Virus record (IMG/VR): IMGVR_UViG_3300003322_000571
Location: 248,001-312,000 of that record
Direction: 5' to 3' (one strand)
Length of the DNA stretch: 64,000 nt
Program-made: the position numbers and the translations under genes
The notes under the pieces: model-generated
Database searches by the model: none
Seen by the model: only the letters and a program-made list of their open reading frames with translations
What the model was told of the DNA's origin: nothing
Shown: one piece after another, positions 19,201 through 63,661 of the stretch
Position numbering within the stretch: position 1 is the first letter of the stretch
Layout: each line of letters opens with the position of its first letter

Positions 19201-22200
19201 CGGTACGATCAAAGAACATAACGACAGTTTCGATACATTGATCTCAGCTGTCAATGTAACAAATGTCTCCCCGATTGGTGTCATTGAATTTGCCGCTCGT
19301 GAATACGCAAACAGCTTGTTGACTCTGCGTGACAGCTTTAACAAGTTGCTCCCTTCGATGTTGACAACAGTAACGAGTAGTTCGTTGATCGACTTGACCA
19401 GCTACGTCGCTGACGCTCTGATTGACAATTATGAAAATAATGATTATACAGCACAGTTGTATGGTGATACATCTGCGTATGATCCTGTAACCAAGAAGGG
19501 CGTACGTAACTGGATCGCTACAGCTCCGATGTTTGGTTTGACACCACTGTACCGTCCACATCTGAATGTTGATGGTAACTTTGTTGAAGTGTTTAACCAT
19601 GACGGACACCGTACGAACATTTCTTTCAGCGCAGCAGAACAAGATCGTGTTGCACGTCTCGTAATCAACGCAACAGATAACCGTACGTTGAACGGCAAGT
19701 TTGGTAAGACGGGCTCGGGTTCGTTTGTCACGACAGTTCCAGCATTCCTTACAACATACGGTTCCTTCCGTACGAACGTGTACTGGTACAAGGTAGTATC
19801 TGGTACGCGTACGTTGTACCGTTTCCAGCCATACGCAATCATCGACAACGATCCTTCGTTCTACGACGCTGATGGCAACGAACTACCTGACGGTATCAAG
19901 TACTACAATACAGTCGTTAAGGCAGTGTTTGAAAAGACTGGTCTTGCGTGGAATCAGATTACTGTAACAGGTGCAGAAGACATCGCTCCTTTGTGGGAAG
20001 TTGTCGATCTTCAGCTGCTGCTTGGTAATTTGTACCTTGAAATCGATCAGCGTTTGTTTGAAGTCACGCCTATCATGCGTGAAGTATTCGACTATGGTTC
20101 CTTGGTTGTTGACAGCCAAGACCAGCTGTTGTATGAATCCCTCAACGCTCAAAGGTTTGCTGCATACGTAACGGAAAATGATATCCGTACACCGTTTGTT
20201 AACGATACGTACAACGCTTCAAACCCGTTCTCGTGGAATTACAAGCGTTCGATCTCATTGCTTCCACCTGCAGCTTTGTCGGTTGTTCCTGCTGCTTCGT
20301 GGCAAGAGCAGTACAGCCGTTGGTACAACACACCGTACCCACATCTTGAACCTTGGAAGATGCAAGGGTATACAGACAAGCCAACGTGGTGGGACGAAGA
20401 GTATAAGGACACAACTGGCACACGTTTGTGGACAGCCCAAATGTGGACAAACTTGTTTGGACGTATTGTCCCAGCAGGCCGCTTGCTGCCGTCTGGAGTT
20501 GTAAGCGTCGGTTCTCTTGATCCGACGATGACGCTGTACACGTACTTTAGTGTTGATACTACGACAGATCAGTTGTTGCCTCCGTATTTCTCTACATCGA
20601 GCACGACAGATCGTTCGTTGTTTACTGATTACGCCAACGAAATCATTGCTCCTGATGCGGACTACATGTTTGGTGATGTTGGTCCGGATGAATGGAACTG
20701 GACAATTTCGTCGCAACATCCGTACGACAATGCTGTAATTGCATTCCAGATGCAACCAGCTAAGTTCTTGCATGCAGCTTTCGGTCCGAAGTTTGTTGAA
20801 GTTGACAAGCTACAAGTTGAGACAATCTTCAAGCAAGTTTACAGCCACGAAGATGCAATGTTCCATGGCGATATCTACGACACTAACAAGTCGTACTATG
20901 TCCGTGGTTTGAATCAATGGTATGTTAACTACAACCGTTACACAGGATACGACACAAACGGTGAATTCCGTCAGCTGTGGGCGGGTTGGGATCCAAAGAT
21001 GACGCACCAATTTGGTGGAATCATCGACACGAGCTCGTTCGAAATTACGAACAGGAATTTCGAACTGATCAACTCCGACTACCGGATCATTCTTGCGAAC
21101 AGTGGCGTTGTCGGTGATTCGTGGGTTGATGCATTCGAAGTCAGCTTGATCAACATTCCTCCAGCTATCGTTCAGTACAACAACCAAGCTGCATGGAGGC
21201 TTGAAGTTGATAGCCTCGCAGCTGTTCCTCGTACAATTAACTATTACGGCGTTAAGGCTTACCCGTTCAGTGCTAATCCGGCTACGGACGACTTTAAGGC
21301 GTTCAACTACGTAATCGTCGGTGCTGATAGTGCAGCAAAGCGTTTCTATGTTTCTGGTGATCAGACAGATACGTTCAATATTGGCCGTAATTTCACTGTT
21401 TCGTTGTCTTCAACGAACAACGGTGTATACACAGTTACATCTTCTGTTTACGAACCAACTACTGGCCGTACGCGTATTAACGTTCAGCAAACATTGAACA
21501 GTTCGACTGTTGATGGTGAAATCGACATTACGGACATTACTCTGCCGTGGACAACCGGCGATCAGATCGTTCTCGGCAGCACGATGTTCTTGCCTTCGCC
21601 GCTTGTGCCAGATACACCGTACTTCTATATCAAGACGGGTGATCGTACATTCCGTCTTGCGGAAACGATCGGTGATGCTTTTGCTGACAATCATATTGAC
21701 GTGATTTCTCGTGGTAACGGCACACACACTGTCGCTCAACTTGACAGTTCGTTCTTTGTGTTTGGTGGTAACGGCAATTCCGGTGAACGTTGGTATCACT
21801 ACGCTCTCGATAAGAACGTGGTTCGTACGTTCACACCTCCACTCGCTGTTCTTGGAATGCAGTCATTCATCAATTTGATGGACGGATACGCTTCGTACCA
21901 ACAAGACAATCATGACGTGTTGTTCGGTCAATCTGAATTCGGTGAGACGGATCCTGACACAGGTCGCCCTGTTGATTGGGCTGTTGAAACTGAACGCTTC
22001 ATCAACTGGGCTTATGGCCTCCGTCAGAACCGTCAGTTCATTAACGATTCGTACAATGTTAGTGTTGACGACATCACTAACGTATTGACGTTCAGTGACA
22101 TGGTTCCAATGTGGCGTACGGGTACAATGGTCGGTGTTCGTTCGACGGGCACATTGCCTGTTCCGTTGCTTGACGGCGCACCTTACTACGTCGTTACAAC

Positions 22201-25200
22201 AGGAACGGCAAACCAGATTCGTTTGTCAGTTTCACCAAATGGTGCTGATACATCTGCATGGATTGACTTCACGACAGCTGGTAGTGGTAACATCACTATC
22301 GGTTTGTTTGACAAACAACGTGCTTACCCACGTTTTGAGTTGAATGCAAACCGCAACAACATCTACGTCAAGACGCCCGTTGGTGTGATTGCCGATGTGA
22401 TTGAAGGACCGTACTCTGATATTCGTATCCAGCAAACGATCTTTGACCAATACAACCGTCCGTTGACGGCTAACCAAATCGCTACTTACCGTCAAGACGA
22501 GCGTACGCGAATTTCCGTTATGCCTGAGCTGGAAAATGATATCGACATCATTTATGTTGGCGATCCGTATAACTACATCCACATCGGTGGTGCTCACCTG
22601 TTCGTTGAAGGGTATGAGCATTACCTGATTCTCAACGACTACACTGTAGGCGGTGCATTGTTGTACGATCAGTTCTACGGCTTGTGGACGAAGAAGTTCG
22701 ATGTTGACTACTTTGAGAAAGAGGATTACACACTGCGTCCAACGCTCGGAGGTTACTACCTCGTCGATGGTCAGTTCCAGCGTAACATTGAAGGTTCCGT
22801 CGTTGACATGTCGGAATACTACGATACAAACGAACTGTCAGAGACTACAGAGATTGCTCGTTACGCTCGCAACTTGCTCGGTTACAAGGGCAAGGAACAA
22901 TATTTGAATCAACTTGGAGTCAACGCTAAGTCACAATTCTTGTTCTACAAGGGAATGATCCAGACAAAGGGTTCGATCAACTCAGTCACAGCTTACACAA
23001 ATAGCCGCCGTTTCCTTGATGCAAAGATCGACGAATTCTGGGCTTGGAAGCTCGCTGATTTCGGTGATCGCCGTGTTAAGACGTATCCTGAAGTGAAACT
23101 GTTTGCGTCAGATGGCGCGTTCGATGACGTTCGTCTTGAATTCTTGTCGTCGAGCGATCAGAAGACAGATCCAGAGTTTGTTGAAGACGTTAACAAGGGA
23201 TTCCAGCTCGTGTCGTTTGCAGACGATTCCCGTTGGAACAATTTCCCTGAGCAACGTGCAGAAATCCGTTCACCGTTGTTCCTGGATTCTCAAGTTTCGT
23301 CAACGACAGCAATTTACTCAGGCATTGCTCCACCACCGGCTGGCGCAGAGGATTCAATCGACTACTGGGTTGATACAACGAATCCTGCAGCACCGGTTGC
23401 TAAGGCGTTTAATGGCAATCAATGGGTTGCTACAAACGAACTGCGTATCGCGTTGTTTACGGTTGGTTCTACGTCTCAGTTGTATGTCGAGCATGGTACT
23501 TTTAGCGATACTGTTCGTGTATTGCGTCGAACGCTTGCAGTCAATGAGTTTGATGCAGATGTCGTCACAGGACCACAGCGTCTTCGTATCGCTGGCGATG
23601 TGTCTGGTAATTTCTCTTCTGGTATTGCCTTCACGTTCGTTCCTTTGAACGAGCAAGTTGTTGTATTAACAACTGCTTCTGTCAATTTCGACGGAACGAA
23701 TACGTACGTCACTACTGTTGAGCCATTCACATTCAGCGCAACGTCTGGTGTTGCTAACGTTCGTAGCTTCTCTGATTACACAACAGAAGTTATTAACGCT
23801 GGTTCTGGTGTTGACGAATTCACAAAGGTTAACTCCGAAAGCGTACGCTTTAACTTGGCTGGTTTCCGTGATTTGATGGTGATCTTCACTATCAATCCGT
23901 CGAAAGCCAAGAACAATCCAGCAAAACTGGTTGACTTGAAAGCAGGCGCCGTCGTCCAGCAAATGCCATTGTGGCACCCAGCGCTTGGTTATCATTCGCC
24001 AACTGCAATTCACAATGTGACGTTGCAGCATGGTGGTGATCCAGCACGTTATCAGTTTACGCCTAACCCGCTTGCTGACAACAACTCTGGTAATTTCTGG
24101 AATCAGAACGAAATTGGTACAGTGTGGCTTGATACATCGTATCTCGGCTACGTACCGTATTACGACGATGTGATTTACAGTGATGTGAATCAGCGCTTGT
24201 ATTCATGGGGTCGTTTGGCTCCGTGGGGTGACATTCGTGTTTATCAGTGGGTTGAGTCAACTGTTCCACCAGAGCAGTGGGATCAGGCTGTGATCGAACA
24301 GACGAACGATCCAACGATTGCTCAGAACGACAAAGCAACTGGTACGCCATACATGATTACAAGCAAGCGTACACGTACGTCTTACAATGCTTCTGTGATT
24401 AACAACACGACGATCCAAGGTCCTGCAGGTGTATTTGCTACAGGAGATGTTGTATTGTTCACATCTACAGGCTCATTGCCAAGTGGACTGGTTACCGGAA
24501 CGAAGTATGCGATCGATACATTGACGGTTGGTGGTGCAATTACTCTGATTGACATTGCTACTGAAGAACCTATTGAAGTTGGTTCAGGTGCAACGGGTCA
24601 GTTGAGTATTGTCCCAGCGTTTGAGGCTAACGATTGGGTTGAAAGCGTATTGACGCGTGATCGTATGACAGCTCCTGTAGCTGTTCAACAAGCTCGTCAA
24701 TTCGCTGGCACGACAGGTGCAATCAACTGGCCAGTTACTTTGCCGCAGAGTAGATTCGTTTGGACGCCAAGTGACTACACGTTGTGGGATCCGCAGGTTG
24801 GTTCGACATTCAACGCAGCACCTGACGTTGTTGATGTCTATGTTAACGGTGTTCTCACCGTGACAGGACGTGTTGTCAACGTTGCGACAACGCCTTCGTC
24901 GACGTCTCAGTTCTATGTTGCAACAGACGCGCCACTCGTGTTGAACGAATACGACATTATTGATGTTGTACGTCCTGTTCACACGTTGACGGAAGAGGAA
25001 GCTGCATTTGATCCAGACTCGTCAGACGATGGTTCGTTGATGGTTCAGTGGAAGCGCGACTATCAGTACTCTGTTCGTACAGCTACGACTGGTAGTGAAA
25101 CTGCCGGCTACGTAACGACAACGTACTATTACTTCTGGGTACAGCATTTGACGTCCCGTAAGACGAACGTCAACGCTAGCTTGTCAACGCTTGAAATCGA

Positions 25201-25993
25201 ACAGCAACTGGAAACAATTCCAACGTCATACTTTGTTGTACAAAAACCAAAGGATGATCCGTATCTTCTTGAAAAGTATGGATATGGCATTATTCCTTAC
25301 GGTTCTGTATGGAGTCTTGGTGTGTTGACAGAAGCTGCTTATGAGATCCCAGTTCAATATCGTCAAGCTATTATTCGTAAAGTTGCTAGCTACTTGACGG
25401 ACGACAACAGGTTTATCGCTCGATTCACACGTGATTGGACTTTGCGTGATAGCTTGACCGCTAATGGCAAGCAATTTAACTTGAAGGACAAGCATTCTCA
25501 GTGGTTGATGTTCCGTCGTGAACAACCTGGTCGTGTTCCAGCTGAACTGTGGGAGCGTTTGACGGAGTCGGTCGTCGGATACAAGGTAACGAACGGTACT
25601 CAAGTTCGTGTCCCTGCAATCGATCGTGAATTGTACGATGCTCAGTACGGTACCGATACACGTTTCGGTCTCGGTGAAGACCAAGCGTTTGTTGATCGTA
25701 CGTATGCTCTCGATTCGATTGTGTCGTATTTGGAAGATCCTTCTAAGGACTTCTGGCCGCTCAATATCGACTCGTTCTTCGAAGATAACAACTTCGATAC
25801 GCCGGAAGGTATTCGTGCAGCGATGGACGAGATTTACGCGACGTTCCCGTACGAACACGTTAACGGAATCTGGTTTGAGACACTGTCAGACGCGTTCGCT
25901 ACGAAGGCTAAATACAAGGAACTGATGAAGACTTCTTGGATTGCCTTGCATGGCGTACGAATCCTTGATGTTAATGGATTGTTTGACGACTAA
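16274..25993 (+). CDS. Giant (3239 aa) baseplate wedge / virion structural protein, gp7-like by position
   Basis: Single uninterrupted 9.7 kb ORF after gp6 with a TATAAATA promoter (16237-16244); beta-rich, aromatic-rich, with internal repeated modules. Confidence 0.65.
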   Translation: MANFSDNKKPALTVSNLLPEVNRSDVNGSVFSTAFDRLLTKDDSARVAGYIGQGNPNAVINRQIKEATPHRQAYQLAPTMVTTVGTETSALSFEAFNSQLELMGVDIDRYKKWGSTLQFNWVPPVNIDMLVNYSDYYWVPATRGDGQQYLTIESPCTKAQSAKQTFMAVVEARGSEFPLKSINYVENQFVIESQMADIFKTGFVFQTTNTSAVSLNNKDWTVDTSSYDFQTNLTTITVIEPISIVQNIAPVASFVGQWWYNTTDNQLYQWTGAAWVIVSKVQVADLSLAATIALFQKAANCACYGSEGWDTGPWDIDEWDSTSTCDIPLPSPWADQNRWVHKSQVQSSATAKRATLPILEYGSFVELNTWVQRDRQWKYRSSTLKTFAATDAAPTRFELEPIKGYAVANVNGQWNIYLFSKSQTVNRDIDHTATFVPGYKFAIKDDTGSAAIYTVLRSEYRELNGTDQAFINAVVGTGWMCTVVILEESTFSSAVQSGGINNIRIEPLKTSQGDTWNGYHAHWLLDVEATTTVATANHAPTVYGERDIEDPAVYSIPPVGFSPQVSVIAIGNTYQEFTANFAGITHIDLADKFKYDPANPTVYATPGSDELRLYINGQRQYLNYTEVVATGSPNYTVVGNAVQTSQTISYVTGIDLSVALNLNDVVRIEVGPAAYEDMGWYAVPVRTVEDEAAFIVATAAGTQPAYVSLTQYGLQEQQKVAINQYPQFNMYDVVTGEVVGASPLFAFQEGSDYPITPAIQRRIVKDATGKEFGFEQFLVDRSNNIMYAYRNTSVQLPYWFNTTDQKVYQWNNRAWTDQFLMELPSGAIVARTAVAAAIDPVELHDVDRALWYDTTNEKLFYRNVATTAWVEITGVTSASADPTLMTVWRHGKTDQQAVPQYVDKNRNPITVGSPDGSWGVVDQWMYNSEHKNYKDITYSQLVTHFSSIINAQPAVPGLPGNGAFTLLQSNYDYGLGGTIKEHNDSFDTLISAVNVTNVSPIGVIEFAAREYANSLLTLRDSFNKLLPSMLTTVTSSSLIDLTSYVADALIDNYENNDYTAQLYGDTSAYDPVTKKGVRNWIATAPMFGLTPLYRPHLNVDGNFVEVFNHDGHRTNISFSAAEQDRVARLVINATDNRTLNGKFGKTGSGSFVTTVPAFLTTYGSFRTNVYWYKVVSGTRTLYRFQPYAIIDNDPSFYDADGNELPDGIKYYNTVVKAVFEKTGLAWNQITVTGAEDIAPLWEVVDLQLLLGNLYLEIDQRLFEVTPIMREVFDYGSLVVDSQDQLLYESLNAQRFAAYVTENDIRTPFVNDTYNASNPFSWNYKRSISLLPPAALSVVPAASWQEQYSRWYNTPYPHLEPWKMQGYTDKPTWWDEEYKDTTGTRLWTAQMWTNLFGRIVPAGRLLPSGVVSVGSLDPTMTLYTYFSVDTTTDQLLPPYFSTSSTTDRSLFTDYANEIIAPDADYMFGDVGPDEWNWTISSQHPYDNAVIAFQMQPAKFLHAAFGPKFVEVDKLQVETIFKQVYSHEDAMFHGDIYDTNKSYYVRGLNQWYVNYNRYTGYDTNGEFRQLWAGWDPKMTHQFGGIIDTSSFEITNRNFELINSDYRIILANSGVVGDSWVDAFEVSLINIPPAIVQYNNQAAWRLEVDSLAAVPRTINYYGVKAYPFSANPATDDFKAFNYVIVGADSAAKRFYVSGDQTDTFNIGRNFTVSLSSTNNGVYTVTSSVYEPTTGRTRINVQQTLNSSTVDGEIDITDITLPWTTGDQIVLGSTMFLPSPLVPDTPYFYIKTGDRTFRLAETIGDAFADNHIDVISRGNGTHTVAQLDSSFFVFGGNGNSGERWYHYALDKNVVRTFTPPLAVLGMQSFINLMDGYASYQQDNHDVLFGQSEFGETDPDTGRPVDWAVETERFINWAYGLRQNRQFINDSYNVSVDDITNVLTFSDMVPMWRTGTMVGVRSTGTLPVPLLDGAPYYVVTTGTANQIRLSVSPNGADTSAWIDFTTAGSGNITIGLFDKQRAYPRFELNANRNNIYVKTPVGVIADVIEGPYSDIRIQQTIFDQYNRPLTANQIATYRQDERTRISVMPELENDIDIIYVGDPYNYIHIGGAHLFVEGYEHYLILNDYTVGGALLYDQFYGLWTKKFDVDYFEKEDYTLRPTLGGYYLVDGQFQRNIEGSVVDMSEYYDTNELSETTEIARYARNLLGYKGKEQYLNQLGVNAKSQFLFYKGMIQTKGSINSVTAYTNSRRFLDAKIDEFWAWKLADFGDRRVKTYPEVKLFASDGAFDDVRLEFLSSSDQKTDPEFVEDVNKGFQLVSFADDSRWNNFPEQRAEIRSPLFLDSQVSSTTAIYSGIAPPPAGAEDSIDYWVDTTNPAAPVAKAFNGNQWVATNELRIALFTVGSTSQLYVEHGTFSDTVRVLRRTLAVNEFDADVVTGPQRLRIAGDVSGNFSSGIAFTFVPLNEQVVVLTTASVNFDGTNTYVTTVEPFTFSATSGVANVRSFSDYTTEVINAGSGVDEFTKVNSESVRFNLAGFRDLMVIFTINPSKAKNNPAKLVDLKAGAVVQQMPLWHPALGYHSPTAIHNVTLQHGGDPARYQFTPNPLADNNSGNFWNQNEIGTVWLDTSYLGYVPYYDDVIYSDVNQRLYSWGRLAPWGDIRVYQWVESTVPPEQWDQAVIEQTNDPTIAQNDKATGTPYMITSKRTRTSYNASVINNTTIQGPAGVFATGDVVLFTSTGSLPSGLVTGTKYAIDTLTVGGAITLIDIATEEPIEVGSGATGQLSIVPAFEANDWVESVLTRDRMTAPVAVQQARQFAGTTGAINWPVTLPQSRFVWTPSDYTLWDPQVGSTFNAAPDVVDVYVNGVLTVTGRVVNVATTPSSTSQFYVATDAPLVLNEYDIIDVVRPVHTLTEEEAAFDPDSSDDGSLMVQWKRDYQYSVRTATTGSETAGYVTTTYYYFWVQHLTSRKTNVNASLSTLEIEQQLETIPTSYFVVQKPKDDPYLLEKYGYGIIPYGSVWSLGVLTEAAYEIPVQYRQAIIRKVASYLTDDNRFIARFTRDWTLRDSLTANGKQFNLKDKHSQWLMFRREQPGRVPAELWERLTESVVGYKVTNGTQVRVPAIDRELYDAQYGTDTRFGLGEDQAFVDRTYALDSIVSYLEDPSKDFWPLNIDSFFEDNNFDTPEGIRAAMDEIYATFPYEHVNGIWFETLSDAFATKAKYKELMKTSWIALHGVRILDVNGLFDD

Positions 25994-56455: not shown

Positions 56456-56539
56456 TGGTTCTCCTTTGCTCTGTACGAAACTATTTACGCTGGAGAAATA
56501 GCAGTGATCTTTACCCGTATACCCAGGGACCGGAAATGA

Positions 56540-56563
56540 AGGAAGGCGCCGAAGCGCCTTCCT
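56540..56563 (-). terminator. Terminator hairpin with UUCG loop downstream of tmRNA
   Basis: - strand reads AGGAAGGCGC-TTCG-GCGCCTTCCT-TCATTT. Confidence 0.75.
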
Positions 56564-56888
56564 ATGATACTGTTGTTATCGGGGTATCATGCCCTCAGTC
56601 AAGCATTAAGCTGCGAGACGGAAGTTACCTTCATTTGCATTTAGGTTGTTTTCTTGAGTTACGGTCTTCGCCACCGGCATGCGCCATCCATCTCAGTAAC
56701 TCTGTCGAAACCAGGGCAGGCCCATGACAGAAGATTCAACGCTACGTTACTTTTCGAGGGCCTAGGTTCCCTTTAACCGTTTCACGCAGCACTAAACCTT
56801 CTGTGGTGGACCTGGCGGGAATCGAACCCGCGTCCAAAATCCTTCAACATCAGTCGAATTACATGCTTCATCTGCTTGCGCAGATACG
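56564..56888 (-). ncRNA. ssrA: Circularly permuted (two-piece) tmRNA
   Basis: Acceptor piece ends ...GGACGCGGGTTCGATTCCCGCCAGGTCCACCA (3' end 56804). After an 80-nt spacer the coding piece starts GGGCCTG..TTCGAC (56723). The acceptor stem contains G3:U70. GCATGC (56677-82) pairs with GCATGT (56861-66). Tag frame 56638-56606 reads ANEGNFRLAA*. Confidence 0.92.
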
Positions 56889-56916
56889 TCTATTTAAGCA
56901 TAGAACCCTAAAACTA

Positions 56917-57507: not shown

Positions 57508-59205
57508 TTATTGACATGCGACGCATTCGTCTTTGTCTTTGGAAGCCTGAACACCAGCCTTACTGTACACGTAGTACAAACCAAGAATGTCGTCGTTCAG
57601 GATCGCTTCGCGGTGAACATCGTTGATGTACGATTCATCTTCACCAGCAGAGAAGAACACATTCAAACTCTGCCATTGATCGATGTATTTACCGCGCGTA
57701 GCTGCCATGCGAATAACTGCATGCTGATTGATTTCGAAAGCAGTTTTGAACACGTCTTTCTCGTGATCAGTCAGCCAGCTAACGCCCTGGACAGAGCCCA
57801 TTGCATCGCGCACTTCTTCGATATTCTTCTTGTTGTACACGCCCTTCTTCTTCATCAAGTCGAGCAAGAACGGGTTGACACGGTCAACTTCACCGCCAGC
57901 TGTACGTTGTGTGAACACCATAGCCGTATCAGGATTGATACCTTCTGAGTAACCACCCATAATCAGAGCAGTACTCTTTGTCGGCGCAACTGCCAGCAAG
58001 TGGCTATTTGCACGACCGTATCCCTTCAACCATTCTGGTTCGCCCCACCATTCAGCGAGCTTCTTCGTTGCGATCTCAGCTTCCGAGCGCATGTGCTTGA
58101 AGATTTCTGCGTTTAGCAGGCTGGCATCAAGCGACTCGAACGGCATCATTTCCTTTTGGAACAGCGAATGCAATCCAAGCAAACCAAGGCCGAGAGCACG
58201 TGACTTCTTCGTGAATGCAACAGCACGTTCAAGACCACGAATGTTCTTAGCACGTTCAATGAATTCCTGTGCGACAGCGTCAAGGAACACAATACCGACT
58301 TGAACCAAGTCCGTATCCTTCCAGTCGTGGTAGAATACTGCATTGACGCTAGCGAGGACGCACGTATATGTGTAGTCTACGCTGGAATGCAATGTAATTT
58401 CGTTACACAGCTGGGCAGCCTTAACATCGAGTCCGTGGTCAAGATACCACTGAGGACGCTTTGCGTTGACCTTGTCAGGGAAGAAGAAGTAGCCCTTGCC
58501 GGTAACCATCTTCGTCTTCATCACTTTAGCGTAACGCTTCAGTGCTTCAGGATCGCGTGCCGTTAGACGTTCAATGAACTTGTTCGACAGGTTCCAACCA
58601 ATGTTGTTACCGTCTGGGTTTTGTTCAAGATACGTGACTACTTCGTAGAAGTCACCGTGATCGATTGGTACGTAGCCAGCCCAAGAACCACGACGTGCGG
58701 TACCTTGCGAAACATACTCCATGTCCTTCTGGAAACCTTCGATGATAGGAAGGATACCAGACGACTTGCCACCACCAAAGATTTCAGCACCGCGAGGACG
58801 AACGTCACCAAGATATCCAGAAGTTCCAAAGCCATACTTCGTCAGCATAGCTGTTTCAAGTTTAGCTTGGTAGATTCCGTAGATTGAATCGTCAACGTAC
58901 GTACCAGCACACGAAACAGGCAAACCTCGCGTCGTACCAACGTTAGCGAGAACAGGAGTAGAAGGGCTGAGCCAACCTTTCCACATTACGTCGAAGAACT
59001 TCTTCGTCCACAGTTCAGGATCCTTCGTATGCGTTGCCAAAGTACGTGCAATTCGCATGTATTGTTCGTACGGATTGGCAGCCTGGTACAGGTACTTTTC
59101 TTTGAAAAGCTGCCACCCACCTGTACTCCACCATTCAGGCATTAGACCTTCTGCCTGTAGTTTCTTTCGCTCCTCCGAGAGCTGACGGTAAATGTTATCA
59201 CTCAT
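57508..59205 (-). CDS. nrdA: Class I ribonucleotide reductase alpha subunit (compact, no ATP cone)
   Basis: SPSTPVLAN, PVSC, QGTARRG, LC.EI, LAVAPT.S, QWQSLN, LYYVYS, C-terminal CVACQ. Confidence 0.95.
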   Translation of the reverse strand: MSDNIYRQLSEERKKLQAEGLMPEWWSTGGWQLFKEKYLYQAANPYEQYMRIARTLATHTKDPELWTKKFFDVMWKGWLSPSTPVLANVGTTRGLPVSCAGTYVDDSIYGIYQAKLETAMLTKYGFGTSGYLGDVRPRGAEIFGGGKSSGILPIIEGFQKDMEYVSQGTARRGSWAGYVPIDHGDFYEVVTYLEQNPDGNNIGWNLSNKFIERLTARDPEALKRYAKVMKTKMVTGKGYFFFPDKVNAKRPQWYLDHGLDVKAAQLCNEITLHSSVDYTYTCVLASVNAVFYHDWKDTDLVQVGIVFLDAVAQEFIERAKNIRGLERAVAFTKKSRALGLGLLGLHSLFQKEMMPFESLDASLLNAEIFKHMRSEAEIATKKLAEWWGEPEWLKGYGRANSHLLAVAPTKSTALIMGGYSEGINPDTAMVFTQRTAGGEVDRVNPFLLDLMKKKGVYNKKNIEEVRDAMGSVQGVSWLTDHEKDVFKTAFEINQHAVIRMAATRGKYIDQWQSLNVFFSAGEDESYINDVHREAILNDDILGLYYVYSKAGVQASKDKDECVACQ

Positions 59206-59219
59206 TGTTGTTCTTGTTG

Positions 59220-60218
59220 TTAGAATGTGAACGCAGCTTCGTTCCAGTCGCGCTGGTATTGGTTACCTTGTGAGCTGAAGAAGTCTTGCATCTGGTAGCC
59301 GTTGATTCCCTTGTAGAACCATTCAGCAATTGGGTTGTATTCAACCTTGTACAGGTTCTCGTAGCCGAGGTTACGGAGGCACAGGTTGATACGTGATTGA
59401 ACGAAGTGTTCGAGTTGGACTTCTGTGATCGAAGCAATCTTGCCCTTCTCGAACAGCTTTTTGATGATCTGTACTTCGTGCTCAAACACCGTCTTAGCAG
59501 CAAGATAGATGTCAGCCTTCAGTGATTCTTGTTCTTCCTCAGACAAAAGTCCAAGTTCGATCAGTTCTTGCTTGAGTGTGCGGAATAGCCAACCTGCAGC
59601 TTCAGCATGGAGATTCTCGTCGCGCGATGAGAAATTAATGCCGCTGACGATGTTGAGGGCTTTGTTCTTACCTTGGCTCTGGAAGTGCTTGAGGAACGCG
59701 AAGCTGCTATACAAAATAGCACCCTCACCGAACGTGAATGCACCGAGAGCACGCAAGTCATCCTTGTTATCGAGGACAGAACGAAGGAAGTCAACACGGT
59801 CCTTTAGAACTGGATCGTTTGTGTATTCGTTATAGAAATCATCTGTTGCAAGGCCGAGTTCTTCGTTAATCTTCGAATAGAACTTAGCGTGTACTGCGAG
59901 TTCCATGGCAGCGAACAAAGCAGCCATAGGCTGAATGTCGGCAGCGCGGGGGAACTTCTTGAACACAAAGTTGAGCCAGAATTCATCACCGATGATCTGT
60001 TCGTACTTCGTGAATAGTTTGAGCGTCGTAATCGTCGCGTGACGCTCTGCTTCCGTCATGTTGACGAGAATGTCTTGTTTGTCCTTGTGGACCTTCACTT
60101 CTTTCCATGGCCAGAACACAGCTGCTTGTTGATCAGCGTATTCGCATGCTTCTGGATAGTCGACGGTGAATGTTGCTTTTGGTTGTTGAATCCTTGGGAG
60201 GATGGTTGAGGTAGTCAT
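59220..60218 (-). CDS. nrdB: Class I ribonucleotide reductase beta subunit
   Basis: FWPWKEV, ELAVHAKFY, EGAILYSSF, RDENLH, DFFS...QY. Confidence 0.95.
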   Translation of the reverse strand: MTTSTILPRIQQPKATFTVDYPEACEYADQQAAVFWPWKEVKVHKDKQDILVNMTEAERHATITTLKLFTKYEQIIGDEFWLNFVFKKFPRAADIQPMAALFAAMELAVHAKFYSKINEELGLATDDFYNEYTNDPVLKDRVDFLRSVLDNKDDLRALGAFTFGEGAILYSSFAFLKHFQSQGKNKALNIVSGINFSSRDENLHAEAAGWLFRTLKQELIELGLLSEEEQESLKADIYLAAKTVFEHEVQIIKKLFEKGKIASITEVQLEHFVQSRINLCLRNLGYENLYKVEYNPIAEWFYKGINGYQMQDFFSSQGNQYQRDWNEAAFTF

Positions 60219-60413: not shown

Positions 60414-60442
60414 ACAGGAAAGGCCGCACAAGGCGGCCTTTC
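60414..60442 (-). terminator. Intrinsic terminator
   Basis: - strand reads GAAAGGCCGC-CTTGT-GCGGCCTTTC-CTGTTTT. Confidence 0.75.
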
Positions 60443-60480: not shown

Positions 60481-60834
60481 TTACTGAACGGTTGGTGGTT
60501 CACGTTCCGCGAGATCAGCGATTGCTGATGCAACAAAACCTTGCAGCTCATCTTCAGTCAGCTCGTGGACAGCTGGTGGGTGTCCAGCTAGCACTTCACC
60601 ATCAAGTCCGATAGAATACAGGCCACCGTCAGTAACTCTCTTCTTATCTTCTGACAAGTTAACGAGAACGAGATGTTGGAAAGTCAGTTCCGTGTAACGA
60701 TCGCCTTCAGGCACGGTAAACACTTGACCTTCTTCGGCTACCTTGTTTTGTTCGTCAAGAGGGAAGCAAGCAAATGAGATGTCGTGTCCGGCTTGTGTCG
60801 GAATGCGAAAGATAATTGAGTTTACTTGTGTCAT
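60481..60834 (-). CDS. Hypothetical protein
   Basis: 117-aa ORF 9 nt downstream of the Acb1-like gene. Confidence 0.6.
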   Translation of the reverse strand: MTQVNSIIFRIPTQAGHDISFACFPLDEQNKVAEEGQVFTVPEGDRYTELTFQHLVLVNLSEDKKRVTDGGLYSIGLDGEVLAGHPPAVHELTEDELQGFVASAIADLAEREPPTVQ

Positions 60835-60843
60835 ATTGTTTTC

Positions 60844-61374
60844 TTATTTGGTAGATTTGCTTGCCCAGTCAAGGTCTAAGTCTTCGCCGTATTCGTCTAC
60901 GATTTTGATCTCACCTAGAAACTTCGTAACATCCGGCAATTCCTTTTCATCAAGGTCGCCAATATCATATGATAGCGTGATGTGTGGCAAATAGTCTGGG
61001 AAGTCGTAAGATGCGTTGTGCTCATCCATTAATGATTTGTGACGGTCACTTAGTTCAGTGCACTTGTACTTCAAAACGAGACATCGTTTCTCAGGTTCGT
61101 CACGGTTCTTCCCTTTTGTTGGCCATACATCTAGCTCAGACGGTGTTCCAATCCACGGAGGACTGATTTTGCCTTGAGCTGTGTAGTCTGGACAATATTT
61201 CCGACTATACAACAACGTTGTGTGCATCTTCCCAGGTGCCACACCGTTTGGAATGTTGTTTTCGTGGATATAGTCCTGCAATGCATCGACAGTTGCTTTG
61301 TCGAATTTCACTGCTGCGTATGTTCCGCGTGTTTCTTCAGTTTGCTCTTTTTCGTATAGGTCAGACCACTTCAT
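60844..61374 (-). CDS. acb1: 2H phosphoesterase, Acb1 (T4 gp57B)-like anti-CBASS nuclease
   Basis: GTYAAVKF, MHTTLLYSR (HxT 1), LVLKY.C.EL..RH, DFPDYLPHITLSY (HxT 2): the layout of T4 57B/Acb1. Confidence 0.8.
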   Translation of the reverse strand: MKWSDLYEKEQTEETRGTYAAVKFDKATVDALQDYIHENNIPNGVAPGKMHTTLLYSRKYCPDYTAQGKISPPWIGTPSELDVWPTKGKNRDEPEKRCLVLKYKCTELSDRHKSLMDEHNASYDFPDYLPHITLSYDIGDLDEKELPDVTKFLGEIKIVDEYGEDLDLDWASKSTK

Positions 61375-61483
61375 TCCTTTATTCTTTCGTGGTGTTACTG
61401 ACGTTTTTGTCAGTAAGGCCCTCGTTAAGAGTGTTGGGCACCACTAGATCAACCTCGTACGAGGTTGATCTATTTACGACTGT

Positions 61484-62566
61484 TTAGTTGTCAACTTCGA
61501 ATCCCGTGAGGCCCTCTTTCAAGCCGTTTGGAATAACCTTTTGCCCCATCATCCAGTGTTGGGTCGTTTGAATATGATTAGCTCGGACGTATTTGCCAAC
61601 CATTGATTTGAACTGACTGTAGTGGAAAGGCTCGTCAACGCGTATGACGTAGCCTTCAATTTCGCCACCAGCAGCTTTTCGTTCTTTCTCGAGTTTGGCG
61701 TAGATACTTTCGATCTTTTGACGATCATATTCACCCCAGTAAATGACTGGGCACGGTTTAATACCCAGCAACTGGAACCATTCCAGTTGTTGAGTCCAAT
61801 CAAGCATCACATTCTTATCGTTCCATACGGCGAATCCGTATGCGTACGTTTCCAAATCTTCATACTTGATCGAATGCTTTGCGTACACGTTTTCAACGTT
61901 AATACGCCATCCTTCGGGAATATCTCCTTGAATCCGGCCGTGCAAGGCACGAACCCAGTTTCGAGAAGGATGCCCTCCAGATGTTACACTACGTGCATGA
62001 ATATGATCATTATACATCGTAGTGTTTTCACCATCAAGTTTCTCCATCACAACGACGCGTTTACCGTTGAAGACGTTAACATCAGGCATCATCCGGTCGT
62101 CACTGTGCATACCAGGACTCCACGGCAGATGATACGTCCGTGGGTACTTGACATGTTGGACGAACAGTCCAAGAACACCGCCCTTGTCGAGGATCTTTTG
62201 AACACTTTCGTCTTCAAACAGGTCACCACGGAGACGAGTTCCGTTATCCATGATAATATTACCCCACTTGTCATACACTTGATCCTCGTACAGATGAGGT
62301 GGCAAGACGGGTTTGGTAATACCAAGTAGTGCTCTGATATTTTCAACAGAGAACGTGTCATGAGTTGTCATTTCACATTCAAGATGATGTTCCTCGCAGA
62401 CGGAAGCACCATTGTTCAAATAGTAGCCGCCGTCAGGGAAGAGTCGTCGTTCGAGAATGTGATGTGCATCGACTGCAGGTTTATCGCAGAAGATGCAAGT
62501 GTGTTTGTCACGTGCGAACACACCTTCGCGGAATTGATCCCGCGTAAGGAGTTTTGTTCCATCCAT
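61484..62566 (-). CDS. HNH-domain / ATP-dependent RNA ligase fusion
   Basis: Start moved to ATG 62566. N-terminus VFARD..TCIFC...AVDAHHI...NNGASVCEEHH (HNH); C-terminus KYPRTYHLPWS, EKLDGEN (adenylated Lys), EGYVIR, KYVR. Confidence 0.85.
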   Translation of the reverse strand: MDGTKLLTRDQFREGVFARDKHTCIFCDKPAVDAHHILERRLFPDGGYYLNNGASVCEEHHLECEMTTHDTFSVENIRALLGITKPVLPPHLYEDQVYDKWGNIIMDNGTRLRGDLFEDESVQKILDKGGVLGLFVQHVKYPRTYHLPWSPGMHSDDRMMPDVNVFNGKRVVVMEKLDGENTTMYNDHIHARSVTSGGHPSRNWVRALHGRIQGDIPEGWRINVENVYAKHSIKYEDLETYAYGFAVWNDKNVMLDWTQQLEWFQLLGIKPCPVIYWGEYDRQKIESIYAKLEKERKAAGGEIEGYVIRVDEPFHYSQFKSMVGKYVRANHIQTTQHWMMGQKVIPNGLKEGLTGFEVDN

Positions 62567-62816: not shown

Positions 62817-62990
62817 TTAACCCAAATGCATACGTACGAAGATCCAGATTAATCCAAATACTGCTGCAAACATCAGTATAGCGAGTAACCACGGATATAG
62901 AACAGTAAGCATTGCCACACCTATGATCAAGGTAGCAAGAAGTCCCATGATGCCAAGCGTAATCAGTGTCGTCCGCAGGATGATGTTCAT
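62817..62990 (-). CDS. Small two-TM membrane protein (57 aa; not in the ORF track)
   Basis: TGATG coupling to the DHFR stop; MNIILRTTLITLGIMGLLATLIIGVAMLTVLYPWLLAILMFAAVFGLIWIFVRMHLG. Confidence 0.6.
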   Translation of the reverse strand: MNIILRTTLITLGIMGLLATLIIGVAMLTVLYPWLLAILMFAAVFGLIWIFVRMHLG

Positions 62991-63661
62991 CACTTTCTCT
63001 TCCAGACAGTGAATTTCAGGTCAGGAGCACCTTCGTGCTTGAACTCCTGAGTAATATCAAAGTGCTTCAGCGTGTAGGCAATCGGAAACTTACGATCGCC
63101 TTCAACGTCCTTGTTGACGACAGTGATGTACAGTGTGTCGCAATAAGCGATACCTTCACTGTAAATCCCTTCACCACCGCAAATAAACACCGTTTTCGTT
63201 TCACGTTCCTCGAACGACAGATGCTTCTCCAATTCGCCAAGGTTGGCGATCGCAATAGCGTTGTCCTTTTCAAGCGGGCGAGACGTAACAACGAAGCATT
63301 TACGTCCGGGAAGGACGCTCTTTGCAGCTTTGTCGCCGAGGTGATTTGTGATATCTTCGTACGTCGTGCGACCCATCACACAAATGTGACCTTGAGTCTT
63401 ACCTTGGAACCACTTGAAATCTTCAGGGTAATTCCACGGAATCTTGCCATCCTTAGCGAATGAACCAGCAAGGTCGACGGCAACAATTGCAGCGTACTTT
63501 GTCCGCGGCATATTGTTGATTTCGTTTTGTGTGACTTGTGCCCATCGTTGTGCGTCTTGCACCTTCCGTTGGAATTCAAGTTGTTCAGCGTGCACACGTT
63601 GCATGTACTCTTGGTACAACCGGTGCATTTCTGCTTCTTGTTGCTTTTGCTCGTCGTTCAT
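62990..63661 (-). CDS. folA: Dihydrofolate reductase with a Gln-rich N-terminal extension
   Basis: IVAVD..G..AKDGKIPW..PEDFKWF, VMGRTTYE, LPGR...VVT, ICGGEGIY, GDRKFP. Confidence 0.92.
   Translation of the reverse strand: MNDEQKQQEAEMHRLYQEYMQRVHAEQLEFQRKVQDAQRWAQVTQNEINNMPRTKYAAIVAVDLAGSFAKDGKIPWNYPEDFKWFQGKTQGHICVMGRTTYEDITNHLGDKAAKSVLPGRKCFVVTSRPLEKDNAIAIANLGELEKHLSFEERETKTVFICGGEGIYSEGIAYCDTLYITVVNKDVEGDRKFPIAYTLKHFDITQEFKHEGAPDLKFTVWKRK

What the first reader, a model, noticed from the sequence alone, without database searches (positions are those of the whole stretch)
60481..62566. Counter-defence / RNA-repair cluster: HNH-RNA ligase fusion next to an Acb1-like 2H phosphoesterase
Seen: a ligase (EKLDGEN, EGYVIR) with an N-terminal zinc-binding HNH domain, immediately followed by a protein with two HxT motifs in the T4 57B layout. 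Known: Acb1 degrades CBASS cyclic oligonucleotides; 2H enzymes also open 2',3'-cyclic phosphates during tRNA repair; phage RNA ligases repair tRNAs cut by anticodon nucleases. Inference: either two independent anti-defence genes, or a heal-and-seal pair with a nuclease domain that trims or recognises ends. The role of HNH on a ligase is unclear.
Basis: partly seen in the sequence, partly recalled or inferred. Interest (0 to 1): 0.6.

Follow-up and report, generated by a model that had tools for sequence, protein, structure and literature searches.

The report
Phage Acb1 beside an HNH-RNA ligase
A 350-kb jumbo phage carries a clear anti-CBASS nuclease (Acb1) next to an RNA ligase fused to an HNH nuclease domain; both gene kinds are already known from comparative genomics, and they sit together only in this phage's close relatives, so they are most likely two separate tools, not a repair pair.

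Summary
On the minus strand, 62566-61484 encodes a 360-aa protein with a zinc-HNH domain (about residues 6-90) and an RNA-ligase nucleotidyltransferase domain (137-335; KxDG lysine K176; EGYVIR). Next, 61374-60844 encodes a 176-aa 2H protein with two HxT motifs. The stated range also covers a third, orphan ORF (60834-60481).

The 2H protein is a firm Acb1 family member by Pfam score, PDB sequence match, predicted fold and conservation of catalytic and ligand-contact residues.

The HNH-ligase belongs to a very large, uncharacterised family (phrog_24030; more than 6000 homologues). Its architecture was already noted in jumbo-phage comparative genomics (Iyer et al. 2021).

The heal-and-seal reading is not supported:
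- Acb1 lies within 8 kb of the ligase in 12 of 92 homologous loci. Eleven of these are the close clade sharing the same Thg1-ThyA-LigA-DHFR block.
- Published Acb1 chemistry leaves a 3'-phosphate, which an ATP-dependent ligase cannot join.
- The genome separately encodes an HD-kinase (Pnk-like), an Rnl1 and an Rnl5-type ligase.

Most likely these are two independent genes. The role of the HNH domain remains open; its catalytic residues are nearly invariant. I rate this a new member of a known kind, of moderate-to-low interest.

The parts
61484..62566 (-). P0001, a 360-aa HNH-RNA ligase fusion. It has a zinc-HNH domain (about residues 6-90), a beta-rich linker (about 90-135) and a nucleotidyltransferase (137-335) with K176 in KxDGxN. 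There is no Rnl2-type C-terminal domain.
   Evidence: Translation. PF09414 E 2.3e-24. phrog_24030 matches full length, E 2.7e-126. AF2 model pLDDT 92.7, pTM 0.87. Structural matches: T4 Rnl2 1s68 Z 14.2, NgrRnl 5cot Z 12.7, IscB HNH Z 6.8. Invariant residues.
62392..62551 (-). The part of P0001 that codes the HNH core (about residues 6-58; residues 59-65, including H60 and H61, lie just beyond at 62372-62391). Zinc ligands are C24, C27, C57 and H60. The catalytic set is H36 (with H35), N52 and H61.
   Evidence: In 136 diverse representatives, C24, C27, H35, H36, N52, C57 and H61 are each conserved in at least 98.5%. Position 60 is H, C or D, all zinc ligands. It aligns to the IscB HNH motif.
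61375..61483 (-). A structured 109-nt spacer between the ligase stop and the Acb1 start. It holds a perfect 12-bp hairpin plus a second hairpin, has no T-run, and carries a Shine-Dalgarno-like AAAGGA before the ATG.
   Evidence: Sequence. RNA fold -38.3 kcal/mol, z -5.8 against shuffles. Not reported as a terminator.
60844..61374 (-). P0002, a 176-aa Acb1-family 2H phosphodiesterase. The HxT motifs are H51/T53 and H131/T133. Y19, W84, E164 and W170 align with FBB1 Acb1 ligand-contact residues.
   Evidence: PF23474 E 4.5e-34. PDB 7T26 E 5e-22. Alignment with FBB1 Acb1. AF2 model pLDDT 83.8; best PDB hits are 7T27 and 7T26, E 1.4e-11, TM by target 0.83-0.85.
60481..60834 (-). P0003, a 117-aa orphan ORF starting 9 nt after the Acb1 stop. 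It is probably co-transcribed. It evolves fast: the positional counterpart in the closest relative shares only 27% identity.
   Evidence: No Pfam, PHROG or NCBIfam family. No homologue by word search. No Atlas lead. Pairwise E 1e-7 to L018:7614-7937.
60418..60442 (-). A terminator-like hairpin (10-bp stem, 7 GC pairs) about 40 nt after the P0003 stop. It probably ends the DHFR-to-P0003 transcription unit.
   Evidence: Consensus scan. This is pattern evidence only.
62990..63661 (-). An upstream DHFR gene, followed by two small membrane-protein ORFs (62993-62817 and 62780-62568). The last of these stops 1 nt before the ligase ATG.
   Evidence: PF00186 E 1.2e-29. ORF list.
57508..60218 (-). Downstream ribonucleotide reductase genes: beta (60218-59220) and alpha (59205-57508). 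They show that the finding lies inside a nucleotide-metabolism block.
   Evidence: ORFs. 87-88% identity to the genes that carry PF00268 and PF02867 in relative L018.

Best explanation
These are two independently acting enzymes. They sit inside the phage's nucleotide-metabolism and nucleic-acid-maintenance block, in the order PhoH, Thg1, ThyA, NAD-DNA ligase, DHFR, HNH-ligase, Acb1, orphan, RNR.

(1) P0002 is an Acb1 enzyme. It is a metal-independent 2H phosphodiesterase that uses its HxT/HxT tetrad to open 3'-5' bonds of CBASS cyclic di- and tri-nucleotide signals. This disarms CBASS effectors. The family assignment is shown here; the activity is inferred from that family.

(2) P0002's neighbour P0001 is an ATP-dependent polynucleotide (RNA) ligase. 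Its nucleotidyltransferase domain is closest in fold to T4 Rnl2. It lacks both the Rnl2 C-terminal domain and the Rnl5 N-terminal OB domain. In their place it has an N-terminal zinc-HNH module plus linker that is dedicated to this ligase family.
- I infer that K176 is adenylylated and that the enzyme seals 3'-OH/5'-phosphate breaks.
- I infer that the HNH module supplies the nucleic-acid grip that accessory domains give other ligases.
- The HNH catalytic residues are almost invariant, so it probably also cuts. HNH cuts leave 3'-OH/5'-phosphate ends, the same chemistry the ligase consumes.

The ligase is one of three RNA ligases in a phage that also carries 55 tRNA genes and a tmRNA. Its likely arena is repair of translation RNAs damaged by host nucleases. 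The ligase-Acb1 adjacency is inherited synteny of one phage clade, not a functional unit.
For: Acb1 assignment:
- Pfam 117.7 bits against a cut-off of 27.
- PDB Acb1 match, E 5e-22, full length.
- Catalytic and contact residues are conserved in the alignment.
- The predicted fold is nearest to 7T27/7T26 (E 1.4e-11, TM 0.83-0.85). RNA-repair 2H enzymes such as LigT score only about E 6e-4, TM about 0.5.

Ligase:
- PF09414 match.
- K176, D178, G179, N181, E225, E304, G305, R309, K325 and R328 are invariant in 43 homologues.
- Fold matches: Z 14.2 to Rnl2, 12.7 to NgrRnl.

HNH:
- Fold matches.
- Catalytic residues are at least 98.5% conserved in 136 representatives.
- Of the best 150 representatives of the N-terminal module, 92 carry this ligase domain. 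Most of the rest are short fragments.

Independence of the two genes:
- Acb1 lies within 8 kb in 12 of 92 ligase loci. That covers all 11 loci with at least 67% ligase identity and only 1 of the 81 others.
- No neighbour family is shared widely.
- In cellular genomes the ligase is a solitary gene among unrelated genes.
- The Acb1 product is a 3'-phosphate (PMC9117128).
- The genome separately has an HD plus P-loop kinase protein, an Rnl1 equivalog and a DRB0094/Rnl5 equivalog.
- Prior literature describes Rnl2-family ligases fused to N-terminal HNH domains in jumbo phages (PMC7824862).
Against: - No activity was measured for any of the three proteins.
- The ligase domain has no sequence-detectable relative with a solved structure. 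Substrate preference (RNA or DNA, nick or single-strand ends) is therefore inferred only from fold and Pfam family.
- A DNA ligase gene lies within 5 kb upstream in 24 of 89 loci: NAD-dependent in 13 and ATP-dependent in 11, of which 8 are within about 600 nt. This could point to a DNA-linked role instead of tRNA repair.
- In the window's clade the ligase, Acb1 and P0003 are probably one transcription unit, so co-regulation is real even if it is not mechanistic.
- Whether the host carries CBASS is unknown.
Confidence: 0.62

Rival explanations
1. Cut-and-reseal enzyme. The HNH and ligase domains of P0001 act on the same molecule. The HNH trims damaged RNA ends (2',3'-cyclic phosphate or 5'-OH ends left by anticodon nucleases) or makes a specific incision, producing 3'-OH/5'-phosphate ends that the ligase then joins. 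This would be end-healing by nuclease instead of by kinase-phosphatase.
For: - HNH chemistry gives exactly the ends an ATP-dependent ligase uses (established enzymology).
- The module is almost exclusive to this ligase family, and its catalytic residues are nearly invariant.
- The two-domain model is confident (pTM 0.87).
- Phages ME3 and HGTV-1 carry the fusion but show no AAA_33-type kinase.
- The gene works as a solitary insertion in cellular genomes, without partners.
Against: - Trimming would shorten a tRNA anticodon loop unless a nucleotide-adding enzyme follows.
- All nearest structural relatives of the HNH are DNA nucleases.
- This genome already has a Pnk-like healing enzyme.
- The kinase test used only one Pfam family.
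Confidence: 0.15
2. Offence plus repair in one chain (the published proposal). The HNH domain is a DNase that attacks host or rival-phage DNA, while the ligase domain independently repairs RNA. The fusion only ensures co-delivery.
For: - Proposed by Iyer et al. 2021 (PMC7824862).
- The structural neighbours of the HNH are DNA nucleases or nickases: IscB, McrA, Cap5 and phage GVE2 HNH.
- The same module is fused to a GNAT acetyltransferase in at least one protein (P0243). It can therefore serve other catalytic partners.
Against: - A free DNase would endanger the phage's own genome.
- A module that only needs co-delivery would be expected in many architectures. It is instead found overwhelmingly on this one ligase clade.
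- Ligase-only relatives (XacN1, Atu_ph07, phrog_34045) show that the ligase can exist alone.
Confidence: 0.15
3. Heal-and-seal pair. The 2H protein opens 2',3'-cyclic phosphates on broken tRNA, and the neighbouring ligase seals them.
For: - The genes are adjacent and probably co-transcribed in this clade.
- 2H enzymes perform this step in fungal and plant tRNA ligases (established knowledge).
- Iyer et al. proposed such a role for jumbo-phage 2H proteins before Acb1 was characterised.
Against: - Adjacency is absent in 80 of 81 loci outside the clade.
- Three of five complete phages with the ligase have no Acb1 at all.
- The protein is much closer to Acb1 than to LigT-type enzymes, and it keeps the Acb1 nucleobase-stacking and lid residues.
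- The Acb1 end product is a 3'-phosphate, which still blocks ligation.
Confidence: 0.05
4. P0001 acts on DNA or on RNA-DNA junctions during replication or repair. For example, it might nick and reseal phage DNA or process ribonucleotide-containing nicks.
For: - A DNA ligase of either of two unrelated types lies within 5 kb in 24 of 89 loci, often immediately upstream.
- The gene sits in a DNA-precursor and replication block.
- Rnl2 and Rnl5-type enzymes seal nicks in duplexes (established knowledge).
Against: - Such blocks gather many unrelated early genes.
- 65 of 89 loci have no DNA ligase nearby.
- The Pfam and fold affinities are to RNA ligases, ahead of DNA ligases (Z 14 against about 11).
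Confidence: 0.1

Closest known systems
Acb1 (T4 gp57B; Erwinia phage FBB1 Acb1, PDB 7T26/7T27; Pfam PF23474)
   Same: Full-length homology: E 5e-22 and about 40% identity to FBB1 Acb1. It shares the HxT/HxT tetrad, the aromatic stacking residues, the adenine-contacting Glu, the C-terminal Trp lid and the 2H fold.
   Different: It is about 24 residues longer, with an extra N-terminal helix and a longer beta-hairpin insert around residues 88-96. It lies in a jumbo phage beside RNR and DHFR genes, not beside the T4 57A/gene 1 neighbours. Its activity is untested.
HNH-Rnl2-family fusions of jumbo phages (phrog_24030; noted by Burroughs and Aravind 2016 as cited in Iyer et al. 2021, PMC7824862)
   Same: The same architecture from end to end (profile positions 2-341 of 342, E 2.7e-126). 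Identity is 45-55% to proteins of RsoM2USA, SCTP-2, Caulobacter CcrSC-like phages and Acinetobacter ME3.
   Different: Nothing essential differs. This copy has a 3-residue insert (T68-D70) that 99% of the family lack. No member has been characterised biochemically, as far as the searched literature shows.
T4 RNA ligase 2 (Rnl2, PDB 1S68/2HVQ)
   Same: It is the best structural match of the nucleotidyltransferase domain (Z 14.2, 180 residues, rmsd 3.4 A), and it belongs to the same Pfam family.
   Different: Only about 13% identity. It is not detectable by sequence search against the PDB. The Rnl2 C-terminal domain, needed for 5'-adenylylation of the nick, is absent. An N-terminal HNH module is present instead.
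Rnl5 ligases (Deinococcus DRB0094, Naegleria NgrRnl, PDB 5COT)
   Same: The same overall layout: an N-terminal accessory domain followed by a nucleotidyltransferase that ends the protein, with the lysine near residue 170 (established knowledge).
   Different: The N-terminal domain here is an HNH, not the OB-like PHA02142 domain. The genome has a true Rnl5 equivalog elsewhere (TIGR02306, E 4.9e-71).
IscB/Cas9-type and McrA-type HNH nucleases
   Same: A zinc-stabilised beta-beta-alpha-metal fold with the CxxC...HH...N...CxxHH pattern.
   Different: There is no RuvC or DNA-recognition partner domain, and it is fused to a ligase. Pfam HNH models do not reach E 1 on this protein.

Membership tests
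Acb1 (PF23474) | Scores above the curated family threshold over the full length | tested here: met
   117.7 bits against a cut-off of 27; profile positions 1-143 of 144. Only one copy in the genome.
Acb1 (PF23474) | HxT/HxT catalytic tetrad | tested here: met
   H51/T53 and H131/T133 align with the two HxT motifs of FBB1 Acb1. They are invariant in 8 clade homologues. Their role is defined in PMC9117128.
Acb1 (PF23474) | Nucleobase-stacking aromatics, an adenine-contacting Glu and a C-terminal lid | tested here: met
   Y19, W84, E164 and W170 align with the FBB1 residues Y12, position 74, the Glu and the lid Trp. My residue count in the FBB1 sequence is one higher than the paper's numbering after about residue 100.
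Acb1 (PF23474) | 2H fold closest to the solved Acb1 structure and not to RNA-repair 2H enzymes | tested here: met
   7T27/7T26: E 1.4e-11, TM by target 0.83-0.85. LigT: about E 6e-4, TM about 0.5.
Acb1 (PF23474) | Cleaves CBASS cyclic oligonucleotides and rescues phage from CBASS | not testable with these tools
   Needs enzyme and plaque assays.
ATP-dependent RNA ligase, PF09414 superfamily | Family HMM above threshold, and nucleotidyltransferase motif I KxDGxN with the adenylylated lysine | tested here: met
   86.9 bits against a cut-off of 27. K176, D178, G179 and N181 are invariant in 43 homologues.
ATP-dependent RNA ligase, PF09414 superfamily | Ligase nucleotidyltransferase fold with the later motifs conserved | tested here: met
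   Z 14.2 to T4 Rnl2, 12.7 to NgrRnl and 12.2 to TbREL1. E225, E304-G305, R309 and K325 are invariant. Assigning these to motifs III, IV and V is my inference.
Rnl2 sensu stricto (T4 gp24.1 type) | C-terminal domain following the nucleotidyltransferase | tested here: not met
   The protein ends about 30 residues after the last motif. The structural alignment to full-length Rnl2 covers only chain residues 0-266.
Rnl5 (DRB0094/NgrRnl type) | N-terminal OB-like domain (PF21189) and the TIGR02306 signature | tested here: not met
   P0001 has no PF21189 or TIGR02306 hit. The paralogue at L014:2643-3791 has both.
HNH (beta-beta-alpha-metal) nuclease | HNH fold | tested here: met
   IscB Z 6.8 (rmsd 2.2 A, 73 residues), McrA Z 6.5, Cap5 Z 6.1, GVE2 HNH Z 5.4. 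The local pLDDT is 89-98.
HNH (beta-beta-alpha-metal) nuclease | Catalytic His, Asn and His, plus four zinc ligands | tested here: met
   H36 (and H35), N52, H61, C24, C27 and C57 are at least 98.5% conserved in 136 representatives. Position 60 is H, C or D.
HNH (beta-beta-alpha-metal) nuclease | Recognised by curated HNH sequence models | tested here: inconclusive
   No Pfam HNH model reaches E 1. Eight PHROG HNH families match, E 1e-5 to 3e-3. IscB matches at E 0.02-0.07.
HNH (beta-beta-alpha-metal) nuclease | Nuclease activity | not testable with these tools
   Needs cleavage assays.
RNA heal-and-seal system (Pnkp/Rnl1 or Trl1 type) | Healing and sealing genes linked across relatives | tested here: not met
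   Acb1 lies within 8 kb in 12 of 92 ligase loci; 11 of these are the clade with at least 67% ligase identity. It is absent from or distant in five complete phage genomes. None is found in 51 cellular loci.
RNA heal-and-seal system (Pnkp/Rnl1 or Trl1 type) | The healing enzyme yields a ligatable 3'-OH, with a 5'-kinase present | tested here: not met
   Acb1 products end in a 3'-phosphate (PMC9117128). P0002 has no kinase or phosphatase domain. The genome's candidate kinase-phosphoesterase lies about 87 kb away.

The most novel reading that the evidence does not exclude
The HNH-ligase is a self-contained cut-and-reseal enzyme. Its nuclease converts unligatable or damaged RNA ends (or a specific site) into 3'-OH/5'-phosphate ends, which its own ligase domain then joins. 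This would be a kinase- and phosphatase-independent route of RNA repair or RNA/DNA rearrangement, used by thousands of large phages and a few bacteria.
Probability: 0.15. Interest if true: 0.7.

Novelty: new member of a known kind. Interest (0 to 1): 0.35.

Why it matters
The Acb1 call adds one more jumbo-phage lineage to a well-understood anti-CBASS family, which is useful annotation and nothing more.

The HNH-ligase is the more interesting half, for four reasons:
- It represents a very large family: over 6000 database proteins, 432 viral-contig hits, and a few dozen bacterial genomes.
- No member has a solved structure or a published assay.
- Homing inteins target it at its active-site motif.
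- It couples a nuclease and a ligase that share the same end chemistry.

Showing what the nuclease does would clarify how large phages protect their RNA or DNA, and it might yield a compact cut-and-join enzyme. This work removes the misleading clue that Acb1 is its partner. It also narrows the testable options.

Tried and rejected
- Near-identical DNA search in the phage collection found nothing.
- Sequence search of P0001 against the PDB, as a single sequence and as a profile, found no ligase relative. Only weak IscB HNH hits appeared.
- P0003 gave no family, no homologues by word search and no Atlas lead. The Atlas's own model is poor, pLDDT 0.47.
- RtcB is absent from the genome.
- Clustering ORFs around 89 viral and 51 cellular ligase loci found no universal partner gene.
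- Burroughs and Aravind 2016 could not be read, as it is not held. It is cited only through Iyer et al. 2021.
- The sigma-70 promoter scan gave no more sites than shuffled sequence, so no promoter is claimed.
- Complex prediction for P0001 with P0002 was not run. I do not claim binding, and neighbourhood alone is not reason enough.
- The read-mapping tools were not used, because expression was not needed for the verdict.
- The distance between the HNH and ligase active sites could not be measured, because model coordinates are not exposed.
Full report
**Setting**

The window is bases 248001-312000 of a single 350,089-bp virus record with direct terminal repeats. It is a jumbo phage. The genome carries 55 tRNA genes and one tmRNA. 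All genes of the finding lie on the minus strand.

**Observation: the ligase gene**

The ORF at 62566-61484 gives a 360-aa protein, P0001.
- Homologues start at the same methionine. The longer TTG-initiated frame listed would overlap the upstream gene.
- It matches Pfam RNA_ligase PF09414 over residues 170-327 (E 2.3e-24).
- It matches PHROG 24030 'RNA ligase' over its whole length (E 2.7e-126), so the two-domain architecture is that of an existing family.
- The N-terminus has CxxC, HH, N and CxxHH. It matches PHROG HNH families at about E 1e-5 and the IscB HNH weakly.

An AlphaFold2 model built on 43 homologues is confident (pLDDT 92.7, pTM 0.87).
- Residues 137-335 superpose best on T4 Rnl2 (Z 14.2), then Naegleria RNA ligase (12.7) and the trypanosome editing ligase (12.2).
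- Residues about 6-90 superpose on the HNH domains of IscB (Z 6.8, rmsd 2.2 A), McrA, Cap5 and a phage HNH.

**Observation: the 2H gene and the third ORF**

The next ORF, 61374-60844, gives the 176-aa protein P0002.
- It has HxT motifs at 51-53 and 131-133.
- It matches Pfam Acb1 (E 4.5e-34) and the crystallised Acb1 of Erwinia phage FBB1 (E 5e-22).

- It starts 9 nt after Acb1.
- It has no family, no word-search homologue and no Atlas lead.
- Its positional counterpart in the closest relative shares only 27% identity.

A terminator-like hairpin at 60442-60418 follows P0003.

**Acb1 membership**

Hobbs et al. 2022 (PMC9117128) define Acb1 by these features:
- a compact 2H fold;
- an HxT/HxT tetrad;
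- aromatic residues that stack on the bases;
- a glutamate that reads adenine N6;
- a C-terminal lid.

In the alignment with FBB1 Acb1, P0002 keeps both HxT motifs, Y19, W84, E164 and W170. A model of P0002 (pLDDT 83.8) finds 7T27/7T26 as clear best hits (E 1.4e-11, TM by target 0.83-0.85). It is followed by another phage phosphodiesterase. Generic 2H RNA enzymes such as LigT score only around E 6e-4. I therefore file P0002 as an Acb1 family member. Its activity is inferred.

The PHROG label 'RNA ligase' for this family (phrog_755) is most likely carried over from naming 2H proteins after the LigT '2'-5' RNA ligase' family.

**The HNH-ligase family**

The family is large:
- The word-indexed search returned 6312 proteins at E <= 1e-5, nearly all unnamed metagenomic sequences.
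- IMG/VR holds 432 matching stretches.
- Only 51 loci were found in 185,579 species genomes.
- In the phage collection the full architecture occurs in Ralstonia RsoM2USA, Salicola SCTP-2, Caulobacter CcrSC-like phages, Acinetobacter ME3 and the archaeal virus HGTV-1.
- XacN1, Atu_ph07 and several huge metagenomic phages have the ligase part alone (phrog_34045).

I searched the first 135 residues alone against 1.8 billion representatives.
- Of the best 150 hits, 92 carry this ligase domain, 31 end right after the module, and 27 have other or undetected tails.
- One of these tails is a GNAT acetyltransferase.
- The versions of about 700 aa contain LAGLIDADG inteins inserted at the ligase motif I region.

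Across 136 representatives, C24, C27, H35, H36, N52, C57 and H61 are each at least 98.5% conserved. Position 60 is always H, C or D. This pattern is expected of an active zinc-HNH nuclease, not a decayed one.

The ligase lacks the Rnl2 C-terminal domain and the Rnl5 OB domain. By architecture it is neither Rnl2 nor Rnl5 in the strict sense. From what is established for those enzymes, I infer that the N-terminal module takes over the accessory-domain role.

**Is it a pair with Acb1?**

I collected 92 loci with an HNH-ligase homologue and up to 8 kb of flank, then searched them for this genome's neighbours.
- Acb1 follows the ligase in all 11 loci whose ligase is at least 67% identical.
- These 11 loci also share DHFR, NAD-dependent DNA ligase, ThyA and Thg1 upstream. 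This is the same block as in this genome.
- Among the other 81 loci, Acb1 appears once, 7 kb away.
- In RsoM2USA and SCTP-2 the two genes are 127 kb and about 70 kb apart. CcrSC, ME3 and HGTV-1 have no Acb1.
- Conversely, about 1480 phage records carry Acb1, while only 33 have any match to this ligase.
- ORF clustering found no widely shared neighbour at all.
- In bacterial chromosomes the gene is solitary among unrelated genes, for example between flagellar genes in Devosia.

Two mechanistic points go the same way:
- Acb1 finishes at a 3'-phosphate, which an ATP-dependent ligase cannot use.
- The genome already encodes an HD plus P-loop kinase protein of the HD-Pnk layout, a T4 RnlA equivalog and a DRB0094/Rnl5 equivalog. 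It has no RtcB.

The adjacency is thus inherited synteny within one clade.

**What the HNH-ligase does**

Shown here:
- the domain folds;
- the conserved catalytic sets of both domains;
- the exclusivity of the module to this ligase;
- the absence of a fixed partner.

Inferred:
- ATP-dependent sealing of 3'-OH/5'-phosphate breaks through K176-AMP;
- an active HNH that leaves those same ends.

The published suggestion is that the HNH attacks foreign DNA while the ligase mends RNA (PMC7824862).

A cut-and-reseal mechanism is an attractive alternative.
- ME3 and HGTV-1 have the fusion but no AAA_33 kinase.
- That test is narrow, however.

A DNA-linked role cannot be excluded either. A DNA ligase of either of two unrelated types lies within 5 kb in 24 of 89 loci, and directly upstream in eight.

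I found no biochemical study of the family.

**Verdict**

- The Acb1 gene is an ordinary, confident family member.
- The HNH-ligase is a new member of a known but uncharacterised family.
- The 'cluster' is a clade-specific gene order, not a system.

Noticed in passing
window 56537-56906 (-): A phage-encoded tmRNA just downstream of the RNR genes. ARAGORN calls it permuted, with tag ANEGNFRLAA. Rfam's best model is the betaproteobacterial tmRNA (126 bits against a gathering score of 84). This may hint at a betaproteobacterial host, in line with the Ralstonia phage relative.
   Followed up: partly
window 61375-61490 (-): The spacer between the ligase and Acb1 folds into a perfect 12-bp hairpin plus a second hairpin (-38.3 kcal/mol, z -5.8) with no T-run. 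Its function is unknown. In the closest relative the two genes overlap, so the spacer is not conserved.
   Followed up: partly
proteins P0123, P0145, P0163, P0214, P0190 (metagenomic homologues): HNH-ligase homologues of 530-743 aa carry inteins inserted at the ligase motif I region. Most of the inteins hold a LAGLIDADG homing endonuclease.
   Followed up: partly
protein P0243 (332 aa) and P0171, P0235 (about 340 aa): The same N-terminal HNH module is fused to a GNAT acetyltransferase in P0243. In P0171 and P0235 it is fused to C-terminal regions with no Pfam match.
   Followed up: no
loci L038, L040, L041, L050, L054, L055, L060, L088 and the window's clade: A DNA ligase gene lies close upstream of the HNH-RNA ligase in 24 of 89 viral loci. 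It is an ATP-dependent type within about 160-620 nt in eight loci, and an NAD-dependent type within 0.7-4.5 kb in thirteen.
   Followed up: partly
genome 332868-332944 and 344214-344286 (outside the window): Two tRNA genes with a CUA anticodon (amber-suppressor type; ARAGORN labels them Pyl). There is also one odd tRNA-like gene with a four-base anticodon at 342827-342896.
   Followed up: no
L014:1698-5888 (genome about 67.7-71.9 kb): The Rnl5-type ligase lies between a CYTH-domain gene and TelA and vWA-TerF-like genes, which are parts of a Ter-type stress system.
   Followed up: no
L103 (Devosia sp. YR412) and L099 (Leptospira sp. 'Mane'): In bacterial chromosomes the HNH-ligase is a lone gene among unrelated genes: flagellar FliF, FlgD and FliK in Devosia, and MatE and Band 7 genes in Leptospira. 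It looks like an isolated insertion.
   Followed up: partly
window 16274-25993 (+): A very long open reading frame of 3239 aa. It was not examined.
   Followed up: no
L021 (genome 311000-321000): Upstream of the finding, on the same strand, lie PhoH, Thg1 (tRNA-His guanylyltransferase family), ThyA and an NAD-dependent DNA ligase. Thg1 is another possible tRNA-repair enzyme in the same block.
   Followed up: partly
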